IMG/VR virus record: IMGVR_UViG_3300028558_000791
Span: 416,839 to 480,838 of that record
Direction: 5' to 3' (one strand)
Length of the DNA stretch: 64,000 nucleotides
In this document: positions 28,993 through 33,709 of the stretch, in pieces
Numbering within the stretch: position 1 is the first letter of the stretch
How the letters are laid out: the number at the start of each line of letters is the position of its first letter
Program-made: the position numbers and the translations under genes
The notes under the pieces: generated by a model
What the model was told of the DNA's origin: nothing
Databases searched by the model: none
What the model saw: the letters and a program-made list of their open reading frames with translations, nothing else

Positions 28993-29578
28993 GTAATAAA
29001 GTCCCATAAGGGATAAGGAAGGTCTATAGTGTTCATGGTTCGGCAACAAGGAAAAGTGATTGGGTCATTCGACCTATTCGTCGATGCCTGGTTGTACGTG
29101 TACCTAGAATGCGAATGCTTCGCGCTCATCTTGGAGCGGGGTTCCAATGCAGTTTGGATAATCAATCCTGCATACATCACTTCTCACCCCATAAACTAAA
29201 CAAACTTAGCTGTTACTGTAGTCACCGGGTATGAATAGCAAATTCCGTTGACACTGGAACGGCTCCCATTCACGGCCCGCCGAACGGCGGAACCGCGAAA
29301 CGCAACGTAAGTAACATAAACGGGGCAGACCTGAGCCCCATTGAATGACGGAGCTAAACTCTCTTACTTAGCAGTCTTGATAGAGCGGATAATCCGAGTT
29401 ACATACTGACTGCTTCGTCATAGAGCGGATGCAACGGCAAACGATGCCGGCTCCTAACCTGTCTCGTCATCAGGACGAGACGCAACTTCTCTTAGTTCGT
29501 CGCTACAAGCTAATAGCTTCCCGGTTACCGGGGCTAGGATAGTGAGTAGTATGTCTCGTCAAAAAGGATTCACACATC

Positions 29579-29995
29579 ATGTCCAATCTCTCTATCACGG
29601 TCGATCTCGTCACCACGGACGGAGCCATCGACATCGATGCTTCGGCCCAGGCGTTCCGCACGGCGGCTCTCAAGCGCCAGGCGGAGCTGGAAACGGAGGG
29701 CGCGGAGATCGCTCTCGCTTGCAGCGAGCTGTTCGACCAGTACCGCGGCAAGGCCATCCCGATGCCGACCGTCGGCAGCATGGTGGCGCAGAAGCTCAAT
29801 GCGCAGCCCGAGAACTTCAAGGTCCTCAGCGACCGTGTTCTCGACTACGTTCGAGCCAACTCGCAGACCACGGGGTCGGAGGAGGACGGCAACCTGGAGC
29901 AGCACCCGGATTCGCTGTTCGTCATCGGCAAGGGCAAGGGCGGCGGTTGCAGCCGTCGTGCTGACGTGCCGGCCAAGCCCGCCAAGAAGGCGTGA
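29579..29995 (+). CDS. Winged-helix-like paralogue with long structured leader
   Basis: LVTTDG, SELFDQY, IPM, SMVAQK, GKGKGGG; very strong codon bias. Confidence 0.8.
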   Translation: MSNLSITVDLVTTDGAIDIDASAQAFRTAALKRQAELETEGAEIALACSELFDQYRGKAIPMPTVGSMVAQKLNAQPENFKVLSDRVLDYVRANSQTTGSEEDGNLEQHPDSLFVIGKGKGGGCSRRADVPAKPAKKA

Positions 29996-30052
29996 GGCCG
30001 AGGTGAACAGGAGCTAATCTCAATCGTCGAGGCTAGCTCCCATTCACCAACA

Positions 30053-30087
30053 AGCTACGAGTGAGATTACCTATCAATCTCGTAGCT
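30053..30087 (+). promoter_or_regulatory. Conserved leader hairpin (second copy at 32743-32772)
   Basis: AGCTAC-GAGT-GAGATT-ACCTATC-AATCTC-GTAGCT. Confidence 0.6.
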
Positions 30088-30123
30088 CCAATGACTTCCA
30101 ACTCAACCGCCACGGAGATTTTC

Positions 30124-32208
30124 ATGACTCTCAACGCCACCAACATCCTTCTTCGTCACAACCTCATCGACATCACTCCGACCTCGGGTGAGGATATCCA
30201 GCTTGCTGGTGACGAAGCGCGGGCTACCGTGCTGATGAATCTCGCCTACTACGGCAGGGGACTCAGTACGGAAGGTTACAAGGCGTTCCTCCAGCTTGGC
30301 AAGGGATCCATCGTCGACTTCTGGGCTCGCATCGAACCCGAGTTGAAAGACATTACGGGAGCCGATCGTAAGATGGGCGACTTCGTTGTCTACAAGAACT
30401 TCCCCAAGGAGGTTCTCGACAAGGACGCAGCGGCCTACTGGATTCCCCAGCTCCTCATGTACTGGGGATTCCCCAAGGACTACTTCACTGACCCGGTTGT
30501 TGCTCGTCCCAAGATGGATAAGCAGCCTGCCGTCACGGTTCTCAAGCTGTCCAAGAAGGATACGCTCAAGAGCATCCTCGATTCTCACGTGCAGTCTCCT
30601 GCTCGTTGGAAGGATCAGGAGTTTCAGGAAGTGGTTTTCCTTTCGGAAACCCTGCCTGTCAACTTCGCCAAGCTGGTGTTCAAGGAGAACCTCGTCAAGC
30701 TGGCGACTCACTTCATGACCAGTGGCCGCAAGGTCAACATCACCACGGCAACCGACGTTCTTCGTCTGGCTGCTGGCCTGAGTGATGGTGACGTGTCGCT
30801 CCGAACCAAGTTCAAGTTCAAGTCTTTCAAGAAGCCGATGCGTCGGTTCCTCCTTTCCATCCTGGAAGGGTGTGCCAACTTGGAAGAGGACGTGGCACGC
30901 CGACCGGAACTGTTCAAGCGCCTGTTGCACAACCTGCATGCAGGTGACTTCAAGCGTTCCTACCCCCGAGTCATCAAGGTGGCCGATGATCTCTACAAGG
31001 ATCGTCTCGTCACTTTCAATGGCAAGGTGGAGAGCATGCTTCTCGCCAAGAACTCCGAGGTTCTCGACGTGCTCTCGACTCGCCCTGGTGACTTCCGAAG
31101 GCGCCTGGTTCACACCTTGGACCTTTTCGGCAAGCAAGCAGCCCAGGCTTTCACGTCTGCTGACGTGTTGAGCAAGTTGACGGTCAATCAGCTCGTTGCA
31201 ACCCGTTCCTTTCTGGGAATGGCCAACGAGAGGAAGGCTCGCATCTTCCCGCCCAAGGGGAATTGGAGTCTTGCCAAGTTTGGTGAGCCCAGGCCGGTCA
31301 CCAAGTCCAGTCTAAAGATCATCGACAAGGCTCTTGCTGCTGCTCTTCGTGAGCGAGTGCCTGCTGTTGGTGTGCTCGACCCTGCCACCAGCAAGGTCAA
31401 GTTGCCGAACAACGGTGAGGAGGGACCGTACACTCGTGGTACTGTCTTCCCGATTCCGGAAGGAACGGACTTCATCCGTACGGCTTCCTACTGGAACGTC
31501 AACGCCAAGGGCTACACCTGGTTCGACAATGGCTGGAACTTCTTCAGCGATGATTGGAAGCCGGTGGGCGCTTGCTGTTGGAGCAGCCCCAAGTTCCCCG
31601 GTCATCGTTGGGACATGAAGGCCAACGACCAGAACACTGGAGCGGTCTTCTCTGGAGACCCGACCATTGCCAAGGGCAAGGCGTGTCAGATGATCGACCT
31701 GTATCCCGAGCAGCTTCGTGCTGCTGGTGTCAGGTACGCTGTCTGGAGCGTTCTCTGCTACTCGGGAATGACCTTCAACGATGCAGAGGAAGTCTTCGCT
31801 GCATTCCAGTGGGGCAAGGATGCCAATAAGGGTAGGCTTTTCGAGCCGGCCCGTTGTCAGCTTGCCATCCCTCTCAAGGGTCAGCAGTTGACCAAGTACG
31901 TCGTTCTCATCGACCTCGATAAGAACGAGATGATCTATCTGGATGCAGGACTCAAGAGCAGCGTTCGTAGCGCTGAGTCGAATGGTCCTCTTCTCCAGAA
32001 GAATCTTCCGGCCTTCATGGAATACATCAAGGCACTTCCCTCTGTCCATGACCTCTTCCGAGAGTCTGTGGATGCAGGTAGCAACACTAAGATCCTCTAC
32101 TCCGATAAGGATGCGAGCCTTCGAGGTGAGTCTGCCTACGTCTTCAAGCAGGAGAACAAGGACAGCAAGTACAAGTCGGTGGACCTGAACGGTCTATTGG
32201 CGAAGTGA
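30124..32208 (+). CDS. ROT/TROVE-like helical repeat protein with C-terminal TerD-like domain (RING-less relative of the Prok-RING4-associated family)
   Basis: NLAYYG, YKNFP, TATDVLRLA..LSDGDVSL, RPGDFRRRL, then a beta-rich TerD-like part (SYW, FSGD, QMIDL, RYAVWSV.CYSG); GGAG RBS supports ATG 30124. Confidence 0.7.
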   Translation: MTLNATNILLRHNLIDITPTSGEDIQLAGDEARATVLMNLAYYGRGLSTEGYKAFLQLGKGSIVDFWARIEPELKDITGADRKMGDFVVYKNFPKEVLDKDAAAYWIPQLLMYWGFPKDYFTDPVVARPKMDKQPAVTVLKLSKKDTLKSILDSHVQSPARWKDQEFQEVVFLSETLPVNFAKLVFKENLVKLATHFMTSGRKVNITTATDVLRLAAGLSDGDVSLRTKFKFKSFKKPMRRFLLSILEGCANLEEDVARRPELFKRLLHNLHAGDFKRSYPRVIKVADDLYKDRLVTFNGKVESMLLAKNSEVLDVLSTRPGDFRRRLVHTLDLFGKQAAQAFTSADVLSKLTVNQLVATRSFLGMANERKARIFPPKGNWSLAKFGEPRPVTKSSLKIIDKALAAALRERVPAVGVLDPATSKVKLPNNGEEGPYTRGTVFPIPEGTDFIRTASYWNVNAKGYTWFDNGWNFFSDDWKPVGACCWSSPKFPGHRWDMKANDQNTGAVFSGDPTIAKGKACQMIDLYPEQLRAAGVRYAVWSVLCYSGMTFNDAEEVFAAFQWGKDANKGRLFEPARCQLAIPLKGQQLTKYVVLIDLDKNEMIYLDAGLKSSVRSAESNGPLLQKNLPAFMEYIKALPSVHDLFRESVDAGSNTKILYSDKDASLRGESAYVFKQENKDSKYKSVDLNGLLAK

Positions 32209-32352
32209 ATGAGCAGCAATACTGGAAGGCTAGGACATACTTGTCCTTCCAGTACGCTAAAACTCCTGTCAAAGACAGGAACAACAAACCACCAACTCCT
32301 TCCGAGTGCCTCTTGTATGAGATGGTATTCGAGTATCAACGGGGAGTTGAAA

Positions 32353-32736
32353 AGTTAGTCGGGCCATGAAGATCCTTCCTTCTACAAAAAAATGGAAAAA
32401 CAGGGTCTACGCTTTCCCGACGCTAACTACCTTCTAGGAATGCTAGCCAGTGTAAGGCTTTCCCTTGGTCCACCTATAAGCGACATGATGCATAGGCGTG
32501 TCGGGGAACCTAGCTAGAAGGTACAATGTCATGGGCTATAAGGAGTCTTCCTTCTACTCACAGGCCAAAAGCCTGTATCAAAAATAGACTCCTTGCTTTC
32601 CCATACTGATGAGCCATGAGAATCCTTCCTTCTAAAAACGGATAAAACAGGGTTCTTGCCTACTCATCATTGACGAGCCATGTAAGGTCTTCCTTCTAAT
32701 ACATGCTAAATAAAACAGACCTTACGCCTTCTCGTC
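32353..32736 (+). ncRNA. Tandem array of at least four covarying structured RNA units
   Basis: Units 32358-32421, 32531-32604, 32607-32669, 32672-32736: stem-GC(C/T)AT-9 bp stem-TCCTTCTA-A-rich loop-stem'-GC-pyrimidine bulge-stem'. Confidence 0.8.
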
Positions 32737-32742
32737 TCTAGT

Positions 32743-32772
32743 CCTGAGTGAGATTACTTATCAATCTCAGGG
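32743..32772 (+). repeat. Second copy of the 30053 hairpin with a different outer stem
   Basis: CCT-GAGT-GAGATT-ACTTATC-AATCTC-AGG. Confidence 0.7.
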
Positions 32773-32852
32773 CACCGGCGCCACGAACACAAGTAAGTCC
32801 TTTCCTTCCAGGCAATGTAGTTTGATGGCGCCTCTAATTGTAATAGAGGAAT

Positions 32853-33116
32853 ATGGAACACATCGAAGACCCTCCTCCTTGTCGTCATTGCGGGCGCTGT
32901 GTTTTCTGTGGTCCTCCATGCTGTGATGGTATGGCTGCTGACCAAGAAGCTTGGTACAAATCTCCAGAGTATCTGGAATTAGTTCGCAAGCAAAAGGAAG
33001 AGAGCATACGTGCCAAGGCAGAAAGAAAAGCTGCCAAGAAATTGAGGCGAGCCAAGCAGCTTGCCGAACGAAACGGCCCTCCCATTCACGGCAACCCGCA
33101 ACCACAAGAAAAATGA
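32853..33116 (+). CDS. Cys-rich basic hypothetical protein
   Basis: CRHCGRCVFCGPPCC; GAGG RBS. Confidence 0.6.
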   Translation: MEHIEDPPPCRHCGRCVFCGPPCCDGMAADQEAWYKSPEYLELVRKQKEESIRAKAERKAAKKLRRAKQLAERNGPPIHGNPQPQEK

Positions 33117-33709
33117 ACAAGCCCTACATCCAACTGAATCAGGACTTTCCCGGAATCGTCAGCCTCTTCATGTACGACAAGGAGACGGCCAAGAACATCT
33201 CTGCATTGGCAGAGACTATCATGCGGCGGGCTCGGCCTCAGGGTCTTTCGGTTGGTCAACGAGAGCTGATTGCTTCGTTCGTCAGCAAGGTGAACGAGTG
33301 CAACTTCTGCTGCGACTCCCATTCAGCGTGCACCGCCGAGTATCTCGGGCAGGACGTGGTGGATGAGGTGATTCGCAATCAGAACGCGGAGTATCTTCCG
33401 CCCCGGATGCAGTCACTTCTCAGTGTGGCGGCATGCGTAGCACTGTTGGATCGTGAGCAGCTCTCGAAACAGATCGCCATTGCCAAAGAGCAAGGGGCGA
33501 ATGACGAGGAGATTCACGATACGGTCCTGGTGGCTGCCATGTTCTGCATGTGCAATCGCTACGTGGATGGTCTCGGCACTACGTTCAAGGCTGGAGAGCC
33601 TGAAGAGGGTGGTCGTGGTCTTGCCAAGTATGGGTACAACTTCGGTATCCGACGCTTCTTCGGTGAAGTCTTTCCGAAGATGTGGTCCAAGTTTTGGAAT
33701 AGACCATGA
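33113..33709 (+). CDS. AhpD/carboxymuconolactone decarboxylase-family protein
   Basis: RELIASFVSKVNECNFCCDSH. Confidence 0.85.
   Translation: MNKPYIQLNQDFPGIVSLFMYDKETAKNISALAETIMRRARPQGLSVGQRELIASFVSKVNECNFCCDSHSACTAEYLGQDVVDEVIRNQNAEYLPPRMQSLLSVAACVALLDREQLSKQIAIAKEQGANDEEIHDTVLVAAMFCMCNRYVDGLGTTFKAGEPEEGGRGLAKYGYNFGIRRFFGEVFPKMWSKFWNRP

What the first reader, a model, noticed from the sequence alone, without database searches (positions are those of the whole stretch)
30053..30087. Same conserved hairpin in the leader of the TROVE-like gene and at the end of its RNA array
Seen: GAGT-GAGATT-AC(C/T)TATC-AATCTC occurs at 30059-30081 and 32746-32768, with different but paired outer stems (AGCTAC/GTAGCT vs CCT/AGG). 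Inference: a protein-binding RNA element used once in the 5' leader (autoregulation) and once as a free ligand, or direct repeats delimiting a 2.7-kb mobile module.
Basis: partly seen in the sequence, partly recalled or inferred. Interest (0 to 1): 0.65.

Follow-up and report, generated by a model that had tools for sequence, protein, structure and literature searches.

The report
Widespread phage RNA hairpin, invariant loop
The two look-alike hairpins are real copies of an undescribed small RNA-type stem-loop, found in many large phages with a stem that varies freely and 17 apical bases that never change, so some conserved factor other than the neighbouring protein probably reads it.

Summary
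Observation confirmed. The 23-mer occurs at 30059-30081 and 32746-32768, twice in the 480,838-bp phage genome, with 0 expected by chance.

In 22 distinct copies from about 12 phage lineages, an 8-9 bp stem that includes GAG/CUC covaries at all nine pairs. It closes an invariant 17-nt module, UGAGAUUACNUAUCAAU, probably a 3x3 internal loop, a 3-bp helix and a pentaloop. G.U pairs occur only on the + strand (7, against 0 A.C). Every copy lies on the strand of the flanking genes. This points to an RNA element.

The hairpin is not tied to the neighbouring gene:
- Two complete relatives with the gene and its small-RNA array lack the hairpin.
- A 97%-complete 361-kb phage has two copies and no such gene.
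- Across 596 Gb of bacterial genomes the 17-mer has a stem only once, in a phage-like contig.

Contexts vary: just after promoter-like motifs (as here), after capsid genes, and inside non-coding RNA stretches.

Best reading: a cis-acting leader or intercistronic RNA signal read by a conserved but unidentified factor. Autoregulation by the neighbouring protein and "mobile module ends" are disfavoured. "TROVE-like" is unproven: the protein has a helical-repeat N-domain and a TerD-like C-domain. The motif is not in Rfam 15 or the searchable literature.

The parts
30038..30048 (+). Promoter-like motif CTCCCATTCAC, 5 nt upstream of hairpin copy 1
   Evidence: 48 copies in the genome, all on the + strand, mostly 20-40 nt before start codons, clustered in the window and the first 40 kb. 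Promoter function is inferred, not shown.
30053..30087 (+). Hairpin copy 1 (leader copy): 9-bp stem AGCUACGAG/CUCGUAGCU closing the invariant 17-nt module
   Evidence: (MFE -14.8 kcal/mol, z -4.9). The stem is replaced by CAG/CUG, UGG/CCA and AGCCAUCAG/CUGAUGGCU in relatives with 88-91% identical proteins.
30062..30078 (+). Invariant apical module UGAGAUUACCUAUCAAU. Proposed fold: 3x3 internal loop UGA/AAU, 3-bp helix GAU/AUC, pentaloop UACNU
   Evidence: Identical in all 22 distinct copies except the free position 10 and one A-to-C change in copy L100a. The fold comes from ViennaRNA. It fits the variants in L005 (loop AAC, U.G pair), L016 (22-nt hairpin inserted in the loop) and G006 copy 2.
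30088..30094 (+). CCAAUGA, conserved 3' flank of the leader copy. Its ATG (30091) is in frame with the gene in all 7 copies of the clade
   Evidence: Meaning unknown. The Shine-Dalgarno GGAG at 30114-30117 and the ATG at 30124 are also conserved, and 30124 matches the N-termini of the wider family.
30124..32208 (+).
   Evidence: phrog_33734, E 1e-122; TerD 2qz7 Z 14.8; NF041916, E 1.6e-53, below the curated cut-off.
32358..32736 (+). Array of four small-RNA units (32358-32421, 32531-32604, 32608-32668, 32672-32736), each with the invariant UUCCUUCUA. A roughly 105-nt structured insert lies between units 1 and 2
   Evidence: The same unit architecture lies next to homologues of the gene in every viral locus examined.
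32741..32773 (+). Hairpin copy 2: 8-bp stem GUCCUGAG/CUCAGGGC closing UGAGAUUACUUAUCAAU
   Evidence: The stem is replaced by GCUCUGAG/CUCAGAGC and CUCUUGUG/CACAAGGG in relatives.
32777..32832 (+). Divergent fifth unit: GGCGCC-closed hairpin presenting UAAGUCCUuUCCUUCCAGG. It always follows copy 2 in the clade
   Evidence: Alignment A4 and its consensus fold.

Best explanation
Both copies are instances of one small structured RNA motif that is widespread in, and apparently specific to, large tailed phages. The motif has an 8-9 bp stem of arbitrary sequence. The stem closes an invariant 17-nt apical module, UGAGAUUACNUAUCAAU. The module most likely folds as a 3x3 internal loop (U.U, G.A, A.A), a 3-bp helix and a tolerant pentaloop.

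In this phage the motif is transcribed on the + strand as part of the operon for the 694-aa protein and its small-RNA array. One copy sits at or near the 5' end of the transcript, 5 nt after an early-promoter-like motif. The other sits between array unit 4 and a divergent unit 5.

I infer that the invariant module is read by a highly conserved trans-acting factor, a host component or a phage protein still to be found, and not by the neighbouring 694-aa protein. I infer that the hairpin acts in cis as a leader or intercistronic signal that sets the fate of the RNA around it. Candidate effects are an end-protecting or processing mark that brackets the mRNA plus four units, or control of elongation or translation.

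Shown: existence, structure, strand, conservation, phage specificity and independence from the neighbouring gene. Inferred: that it acts as RNA rather than as + strand ssDNA, that a factor binds it, and what that binding does.
For: - Structure: all 9 stem pairs show compensatory double changes across 22 distinct copies with 21 different stems. 96.6% of cells are paired, against 20-50% when the partner is slid and 69% in shuffles (0 of 500 shuffles reach the observed value).
- Strand: the inner 8 pairs are 169 Watson-Crick and 7 G.U, with 0 A.C. All copies lie on the strand of the flanking ORFs in 10 of 10 lineages checked.
- Selection on the module: the 17 nt are identical between phages whose neighbouring proteins are only 58% identical (L021) and between unrelated phages of 33-55% G+C.
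- Variants keep UGAGA...UCAAU and change or expand only the loop (L005, L016, G006 copy 2).
- Specificity control: of the 51 places where RTGAGATTACNTATCAATY occurs in 596 Gb of prokaryote genomes, 50 have 0-4 flanking pairs. The single stemmed hit is a contig of the L104/L121 phage type. In viral contigs, 15 of 32 hits have 8-9 bp stems.
- No false positives with R1 at E up to 1 in 610 kb searched on both strands.
- Leader position: copy 1 follows CTCCCATTCAC by 5 nt. In G005 two copies each follow a repeated promoter-like cassette and precede a conserved leader and gene. L107 is similar.
- Independence from the 694-aa protein.
Against: - No RNA data exist. No RNA run holds the locus, so transcription, RNA ends and processing are unobserved.
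- No binding factor was identified. Genes shared by the hairpin-bearing genomes G000, G005 and G006 but absent from the hairpin-free G002 and G003 are only sugar-nucleotide enzymes, DHFR and an HslV-like peptidase.
- Contexts are heterogeneous: after promoters, after capsid genes, inside non-coding RNA stretches, and before a promoter in G006 copy 2. A single mechanism is therefore not evident.
- In L096 the promoter-like motif abuts the stem, so a transcript starting there might lack part of the 5' arm.
- The apical fold has no covariation support because it never varies.
- The pattern 'invariant loop plus covarying stem' is also that of ssDNA hairpins nicked by HUH enzymes.
Confidence: 0.55

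Rival explanations
1. Operator or ligand of the neighbouring 694-aa protein. The protein binds the leader hairpin to repress its own mRNA, and binds the second copy as part of its RNA cargo.
For: In this clade both copies bracket the gene and its array, and both were kept with independent compensatory changes. L021 also has its single copy within the locus. Copy 1 lies in the leader.
Against: The hairpin is absent from about 80 of 89 homologous loci and from two complete genomes with the protein and arrays (G002, G003). It is present twice in the 97%-complete G006, which has no homologue, and in 4 further large contigs with none found. The leader copy ends 26 nt before the Shine-Dalgarno sequence and 36 nt before the ATG, so it does not occlude the ribosome site.
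Confidence: 0.1
2. A DNA-level element. The + strand hairpin (ssDNA or cruciform) is a nick, recombination or origin site for an HUH-type or similar enzyme. The two copies could then be ends of a 2.7-kb mobile or shuffled module.
For: An invariant loop with a covarying stem is the signature of HUH nick sites. The loop contains TTAC and TCAA, which I recall as the IS608 cleavage tetranucleotides (from memory, not tested). L104 and L121 share the hairpin and the following ~25 nt but have different capsid genes upstream, which may be a recombination junction. G005 has two promoter-hairpin-leader cassettes.
Against: No transposase or Rep gene lies in or beside the module. Only 1-2 copies occur per genome, and every copy has a different stem, whereas copied ends share the whole sequence. 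No empty site or single-hairpin scar occurs in relatives, and L021 has one copy inside the module. No deletion joints appear in contigs of 4 metagenome runs (weak evidence, since contigs drop rare forms). Orientation always follows transcription.
Confidence: 0.1
3. A nut/put-like nascent-RNA element. Formed soon after initiation, it loads a factor onto RNA polymerase, or contacts the polymerase itself, and so changes elongation or termination downstream.
For: There are two copies per genome differing at one loop base, one just after a promoter-like motif and one further down the operon, as with lambda nutL and nutR (general knowledge). The hairpin follows promoter-like motifs in W, G005 (twice) and L107.
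Against: No boxA-like partner was identified, and the fold is not a GNRA-like pentaloop on a 5-bp stem. Some copies lie directly after a capsid gene or upstream of a promoter. No terminator-like site lies on the + strand in 29500-33300.
Confidence: 0.1
4. A small ligand-sensing aptamer (mini-riboswitch) in leaders.
For: A tiny, absolutely conserved internal loop sits in a stem of free sequence, often in 5' leaders.
Against: No expression platform is evident, as the hairpin lies 26 nt or more from the Shine-Dalgarno sequence and no terminator follows. Downstream genes are unrelated: the 694-aa protein, a methyltransferase, small unknown ORFs and non-coding RNAs. There is no Rfam match.
Confidence: 0.05
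5. An ordinary stabilising or terminator hairpin duplicated by chance, with no specific recognition.
For: Stable stems lie at operon boundaries.
Against: No U-tract follows either copy. The 17-nt invariance across unrelated phages, with stems free to vary, cannot be explained without sequence-specific selection.
Confidence: 0.02

Closest known systems
Phage operator-type RNA hairpins read by a protein through loop or bulge bases (lambda N-boxB at nutL/nutR; MS2/PP7 coat-protein operators; T4 gp43 operator)
   Same: A short stem of little sequence constraint presents a few invariant unpaired bases. It lies in leaders or between cistrons, with one or two copies per genome. As I recall, nutL and nutR also differ by one loop base (from memory, not checked here).
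   Different: The architecture differs: 8-9 bp, then a 3x3 internal loop, a 3-bp helix and a pentaloop. No cognate protein is known. Conservation reaches across phages of very different G+C and gene content, whereas those operators are lineage-specific.
T7-type intercistronic RNase III processing hairpins
   Same: Intergenic hairpins with an internal loop, on the transcribed strand, between genes and at operon borders. Cleavage there would leave end-protecting stems.
   Different: The helix is far shorter, about 15 stacked layers against 20 bp or more. Cleavage is untested, and the invariant sequence has no known relation to RNase III sites.
HUH-enzyme nick-site stem-loops (CRESS-DNA virus origins with an invariant nonamer; IS200/IS605 end hairpins; REP/RAYT)
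   Same: A covarying stem with an invariant loop, and strand specificity.
   Different: No HUH gene is nearby, copy number is low, and orientation is tied to transcription. G.U pairs are tolerated in the stem.
PeSL promoter/stem-loop cassettes of T4-type phages
   Same: A promoter-like motif directly followed by a stem-loop, repeated in front of different small early genes (G005, W).
   Different: The conserved part here is the apical module, and it is shared by unrelated phages with different promoter motifs. Cassette mobility was not observed.
Ro60 (TROVE) with adjacent Y RNA genes (for the neighbouring gene and array, not the hairpin)
   Same: A large helical-repeat protein is encoded next to 2-5 small stem-plus-large-loop RNAs on the same strand. 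Y RNA genes next to Ro60 are reported in more than 250 bacteria and phages (PMC4201824).
   Different: There is no TROVE or vWA signature. The C-domain is TerD-like. The RNAs carry UUCCUUCUA and GCUUUCC and match no Rfam Y RNA model.

Membership tests
Any Rfam 15 family | Covariance-model match at the gathering score, or at least E below 10 | tested here: not met
   Only a tRNA in the window at gathering score. Nothing overlaps either hairpin in 29950-32900 at E up to 10. Nothing on the hairpins in 8 related loci at E up to 1.
Intrinsic (Rho-independent) terminator | G+C-rich hairpin followed by a U-tract | tested here: not met
   Copy 1 is followed by CCAAUGAC and copy 2 by ACCGGCGCC. The scan finds no + strand terminator-like site in 29500-33300.
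lambda-type nut site (boxB) | About 5-bp stem with a GNRA-like pentaloop, boxA nearby, cognate N-type antiterminator | tested here: not met
   The stem is 8-9 bp with an internal loop and a 17-nt apical module. BoxA and an N protein were not searched for.
Mobile-element terminal hairpins (IS200/IS605, REP/RAYT, MITE) | Copies share the whole sequence including the stem; many copies or a transposase present; empty sites in relatives | tested here: not met
   21 different stems in 22 copies. 1-2 copies per genome. No transposase domain in the flanking ORFs. No empty site and no deletion joints.
HUH nick-site stem-loop | Invariant loop holding the nick site, covarying stem, and a Rep, relaxase or Y1 enzyme encoded by the replicon | tested here: inconclusive
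   The loop and stem pattern is met. The enzyme was not searched genome-wide. Orientation follows transcription.
RNase III processing site | About 20 bp or more of helix (may hold an internal loop), cleaved by RNase III | tested here: not met
   Only 9+3+3 stacked layers. Cleavage cannot be tested with these tools.
TROVE/Ro60 (claim about the neighbouring gene) | TROVE domain (PF05731) detectable by sequence | tested here: not met
   No Pfam hit at E up to 0.1 for the protein. No TROVE hit among 9 family members at E up to 1. No PDB sequence match with the family profile at E up to 10 beyond noise.
TROVE/Ro60 (claim about the neighbouring gene) | Ring of HEAT-like repeats followed by a vWA domain | tested here: inconclusive
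   The C-domain is TerD-like, not vWA (2qz7 Z 14.8, 2kxt Z 13.3). The N-domain model (pLDDT 84) aligns with phage phiLo Ro60 9l5y at Z 6.8 over 246 residues (rmsd 5.7) and with 1yvp at Z 6.0 over 195 residues. These are the longest moderate-rmsd alignments, but they fall below the tool's stated noise level for helical repeats. Foldseek finds no Ro60.
Y RNA / YrlA (claim about the array) | Match to the Rfam Y RNA models; Ro60-binding stem; tRNA-like domain | tested here: not met
   No such hit at E up to 10. The units instead share CYAU-stem-UUCCUUCUA...stem-GCUUUCC.

The most novel reading that the evidence does not exclude
The hairpin defines a new, phage-specific class of cis-acting RNA signal. 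It is a 35-nt module whose invariant internal loop is read by a universally conserved host machine such as RNA polymerase, the ribosome or a core RNase, or by a yet unknown phage factor. Unrelated large phages use it to mark 5' leaders and intercistronic boundaries of mRNAs and non-coding RNAs. In this phage it brackets an equally undescribed ribonucleoprotein operon: a helical-repeat/TerD protein plus an array of UUCCUUCUA small RNAs.
Probability: 0.4. Interest if true: 0.8.

Novelty: new variant of a known kind. Interest (0 to 1): 0.62.

Why it matters
If real, this is a compact and easily testable RNA motif shared by unrelated, mostly uncultured large phages. Its 17 bases are held fixed while everything around them changes. 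Such invariance usually marks contact with a conserved machine, so the hairpin could serve as bait to find a new phage-host RNA interaction.

It also corrects the picture of the locus. The hairpin is not the private operator of the neighbouring protein. The neighbouring protein with its small-RNA array is a separate, widespread and unannotated system, also present in the cultured Xanthomonas phages XacN1 and Xoo-sp13, where it can be studied at the bench.

Tried and rejected
- Rfam at gathering and permissive thresholds found nothing.
- The exact 23-mer is absent from IMG/VR. The hits came only after relaxing to the 17-mer core.
- Pairing partner for the loop: the longest complement in the locus is 8 nt (UAAUCUCA at 30015), and it is not conserved in relatives. 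Kissing or antisense models were dropped.
- The one extra 17-mer-like hit in G002 (2 mismatches, L093) has no stem and is chance.
- RNA evidence: no RNA run holds the locus. Laying 4 DNA runs on 3.6 kb gave only identical contigs and no joints between the repeats.
- Candidate trans-factor by gene co-occurrence (G000, G005, G006 against G002, G003): only RmlA/RmlD-type enzymes, an epimerase, DHFR, an HslV-like peptidase and two unknowns. There was no RNA-binding lead, and the sample is small.
- Cultured phages: blastn of the 35-mers against INPHARED gave only partial chance hits inside genes. The method is insensitive for a 17-nt core.
- Literature: the 17-mer occurs in no paper. The 13-mer hits are cloning primers. 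SCO0854 and MXAN_6230 occur in no paper.
- Downstream genes of the hairpins in other phages share no function.
- The in-frame ATG 3 nt after copy 1 (also seen after the L104/L121 copies) was considered as a hairpin-guided start codon. It was left open because the SD-ATG at 30124 is also conserved and matches the family N-terminus.
- Complex prediction, the large protein searches and the atlas searches were not used. The question did not rest on them.

Full report
**1. Setting**

The window is the last 64 kb of a 480,838-bp virus record (G000:C1:416839-480838). The same phage is seen at 100% identity in a rhizosphere metagenome contig (L020). It is also present in several rhizosphere DNA runs.

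The finding lies in a stretch of small + strand genes. Many of them are preceded by the motif CTCCCATTCAC. That motif has 48 copies in the genome, all on the + strand, mostly 20-40 nt before start codons. I read it as an early-promoter-like motif; this is an inference.

**2. The observation**

The sequence is as described. The 23-mer GAGTGAGATTACYTATCAATCTC matches only at 30059-30081 and 32746-32768 with up to three mismatches. Shuffles gave 0 matches. The whole genome has only these two copies.

- Copy 1 (30053-30087) starts 5 nt after a CTCCCATTCAC motif (30038-30048). It ends 26 nt before the GGAG (30114) and 36 nt before the ATG (30124) of a 694-aa ORF (30124-32208).
- Copy 2 (32741-32773) lies after the fourth unit of a small-RNA array.
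- Neither copy is followed by a U-tract, and no + strand terminator-like site is found in the region.

**3. Structure**

It gives a continuous stem that includes GAG/CUC, then a 3x3 internal loop (UGA/AAU), a 3-bp helix (GAU/AUC) and a pentaloop.

Comparative data decide between the two folds. A metagenome scan with the protein gave 78 loci. Eight of them encode proteins 78-91% identical to the window's. Wherever the contig reaches, these carry the hairpin at the same two positions, with changed stems:
- Leader copy: AGCUACCAG/CUGGUAGC, AGCUGCUGG/CCAGUAGCU, AACUGCUGG/CCAGCAGUU, AGCCAUCAG/CUGAUGGCU.
- Second copy: GCUCUGAG/CUCAGAGC, CUCUUGUG/CACAAGGG.

On these 13 copies the continuous stem is 97% paired, with 7 of 9 pairs changed on both sides.

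**4. The motif is much wider than this locus**

L021, a 422-kb contig whose protein is only 58% identical, has the exact 17-mer with an unrelated stem (GGCUAUAUG/CAUAUAGCU). It sits between the gene and its array.

An exact scan of IMG/VR for TGAGATTACNTATCAAT gave 32 loci. Fifteen of them have an 8-9 bp closing stem of unrelated sequence, representing about eight further lineages on contigs of 10-361 kb. The rest have 0-2 flanking pairs and are chance.

The pooled alignment of 22 distinct copies has 21 different stems:
- All nine stem pairs show compensatory double changes, and 96.6% of cells are paired. Sliding the partner gives 20-50% paired. Shuffles give 69%, and 0 of 500 reach the observed value.
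- The inner eight pairs are 169 Watson-Crick and 7 G.U, with 0 A.C. The + strand is therefore the one under selection.
- Column 9/27 switches from G-C to A-U in two phages. This supports the continuous-stem fold over a bulged alternative.

Natural variants keep UGAGA...UCAAU and alter only the apex:
- L005 has loop AAC and a U.G pair.
- L016 copy 2 has a 22-nt hairpin inserted in the loop.
- G006 copy 2 reads UGAGAU-CACG-UUCAAU.

The recognised part is therefore most likely the internal loop with its two flanking helices. This is an inference, because the apex never varies enough to show covariation.

**5. Specificity control**

In one genome for each of 185,579 prokaryote species (596 Gb), RTGAGATTACNTATCAATY occurs 51 times. 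Fifty occurrences have 0-4 flanking pairs, and several lie in a conserved Flavobacteriaceae coding sequence. The single stemmed one (L180) has the same sequence as the phage contigs L104 and L121.

The stem is therefore not a by-product of the 17-mer. The motif is phage-specific, and it is not a copy of a host leader. Covariance model R1 gives no false hit at E up to 1 in 610 kb searched on both strands.

**6. Contexts**

In every lineage checked, the hairpin is intergenic and on the strand of the flanking ORFs.
- W copy 1, both copies in G005 and the L107 copy follow a repeated promoter-like motif by a few bases. In G005 a conserved leader, a Shine-Dalgarno sequence and a gene then follow.
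- In L104 and L121 it lies 7-17 nt after the stop codon of the major capsid gene. The two capsid genes belong to different families. An ATG follows it by 3-4 nt; in L121 this ATG opens a methyltransferase gene.
- In L096, L107 and L124 it lies in ORF-free stretches with tRNA-like pieces.
- G006 copy 2 follows a terminator-like hairpin and precedes a sigma-70-like promoter.
- Downstream genes share no function.

**7. Relation to the neighbouring protein and array**

The 694-aa protein has no Pfam domain. It belongs to phrog_33734, of unknown function. It hits NCBIfam NF041916 (MXAN_6230/SCO0854 family) at E 1.6e-53, below the curated cut-off.

AlphaFold models have pLDDT 81 for the whole protein and 84 for the N-domain.
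- They show an all-helical N-domain and a C-terminal beta-sandwich.
- The sandwich matches TerD (2qz7 Z 14.8, 2kxt Z 13.3).
- The N-domain aligns with Ro60 of Thermus phage phiLo (Z 6.8, 246 residues) and with Xenopus Ro60 (Z 6.0). This is below the tool's stated noise level for helical repeats, and Foldseek does not find Ro60.
- 'TROVE-like' is thus a lead, not a result.

In all 12 viral loci examined, homologues of this gene are adjacent to same-strand arrays of small RNAs of one architecture. The architecture is: stem A, CYAU, 8-bp stem B, UUCCUUCUA, a variable loop, stem B', GCUUUCC, stem A'. There are 147 distinct units, and stem B has 7-8 of 8 pairs in 123 of them. This is reminiscent of Ro60 with adjacent Y RNA genes (PMC4201824), but no Rfam model matches.

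The hairpin is uncoupled from this system in both directions:
- Among 89 homologous loci, only the window's clade and L021 carry it.
- The complete genomes G002 and G003 have the protein and arrays but no hairpin.
- G006 (97% complete) has two hairpins and no homologue. Four other hairpin-bearing contigs have none found either.

Within the clade, copy 2 is always followed by a divergent unit that presents UUCCUUCC in its loop. In the relatives, the ~10 nt upstream of copy 1 (UCUCGUCUAG) resemble those upstream of copy 2. The leader copy therefore probably arose by duplication of the array copy. Both copies were then kept with independent compensatory changes.

**8. Mechanism**

What is shown: a + strand hairpin under strong selection for pairing and for a fixed 17-nt module. 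It is phage-specific, co-oriented with transcription, located in leaders and between cistrons, and independent of the neighbouring protein.

What I infer: it acts as RNA and is read by a conserved factor, so that it marks the RNA around it. In this phage it brackets the mRNA plus four units. The simplest roles are an end-protecting or processing mark, or a leader signal acting on elongation or translation.

I could not identify the factor. A small co-occurrence screen gave only metabolic genes, and no RNA data exist. The rivals and their weights are listed in the Rival explanations section. The most serious is a DNA-level HUH-type nick or recombination site. It shares the invariant-loop, covarying-stem pattern, but it lacks an enzyme gene nearby, copy number, shared stems or any sign of excision.

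**9. Novelty**

The motif matches no Rfam 15 family. Its 17-mer occurs in no searchable paper. It is a new family within the known kind 'phage cis-acting hairpin read through unpaired bases'. It is unusual for its breadth across unrelated phages.

No alternative genetic code was used. No sequence was altered or designed.

Noticed in passing
window 32358-32736; also L003 2540-2930, L004 2740-2890, and L005-L092 next to the homologous gene: An undescribed small-RNA family occurs in tandem arrays of 2-5 units. The unit is stem A, CYAU, 8-bp covarying stem B, invariant UUCCUUCUA, a variable loop, stem B', GCUUUCC, stem A'. Arrays always lie on the strand of the 694-aa protein's homologues, upstream or downstream of them, including in the cultured Xanthomonas phages XacN1 and Xoo-sp13. 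There are 147 distinct units. No Rfam match.
   Followed up: partly
window 30124-32208: The 694-aa protein has a helical-repeat N-domain and a TerD-like beta-sandwich C-domain (Z 14.8 to 2qz7). Part of it (residues 294-613) hits NCBIfam NF041916 'MXAN_6230/SCO0854 family RING domain-containing protein' at E 1.6e-53, below the cut-off, so a bacterial sister family exists.
   Followed up: partly
window 3142-61647 (48 sites), e.g. 30038, 33080, 34936: CTCCCATTCAC(GG) occurs 48 times, only on the + strand, mostly 20-40 nt before start codons of small genes. The sites are concentrated in the last 64 kb and the first 40 kb of the genome. It is a likely early promoter of a phage-specific or modified polymerase.
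   Followed up: partly
G000 420001-480000 (the window) against the rest of the genome: The window is 49-55% G+C, while the other 420 kb are 39-45%. This is a sharp compositional break that coincides with the promoter-rich early region.
   Followed up: no
window 32220-32255 and 32293-32350: Two further conserved structures lie directly after the stop codon: a strong hairpin ACUGGAAGG...CCUUCCAGU (z -4.1) and a roughly 58-nt hairpin (z -4.1). Both recur with changed sequence in L005, L015-L018 and L027.
   Followed up: partly
window 32424-32526: A roughly 105-nt insert lies between array units 1 and 2. It is closed by GUACCUUCUAG/CUAGAAGGUAC. It is absent from L017 and L019, and L016 and L018 carry other inserts at that point, one of them apparently with an ORF.
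   Followed up: no
L018 2300-2450, L019 6650-6800, L027 1810-1990, L005 7160-7260: Relatives carry a tRNA-like RNA downstream of hairpin copy 2. It has a T-arm GGGUUCGAGUCCC next to a long closing stem, and ARAGORN does not call it as a tRNA. The window lacks it. The divergent hairpin in L005 sits just upstream of this element.
   Followed up: no
L016 3989-4044: This hairpin copy 2 carries a 22-nt G+C hairpin inserted in its apical loop, while UGAGAUUACC...AUCAAU and the stem are kept. It is a natural 'loop is dispensable' experiment.
   Followed up: yes
L104 4857-4891 (-) and L121 977-1011 (+): The same hairpin, with the same stem, follows two major capsid genes of different families (phrog_334 and phrog_1005). 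L104 retains only the first ~25 nt of the methyltransferase gene that follows the hairpin in L121. This may be a recombination junction at the hairpin.
   Followed up: partly
window 30091-30123: An ATG 3 nt after hairpin copy 1 is in frame with the 694-aa ORF in all seven clade members, including one with a 3-nt indel. One third-codon position varies (GCC/GCA/GCT). It could be an 11-residue N-terminal extension or an upstream start.
   Followed up: partly
L131 1492-1526 and 2099-2133 (G005 290001-290642): Two promoter-like/hairpin/leader cassettes lie 607 nt apart and drive different small genes. One hairpin carries the only core substitution seen, UGCGAU.
   Followed up: partly
L021 1295-1404 and 6565-6707: A (ATGGCN)n tandem repeat falsely matches plant microRNA models. 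A tRNA model match spans 143 nt, suggesting a tRNA gene with a long insertion inside the small-RNA array.
   Followed up: no
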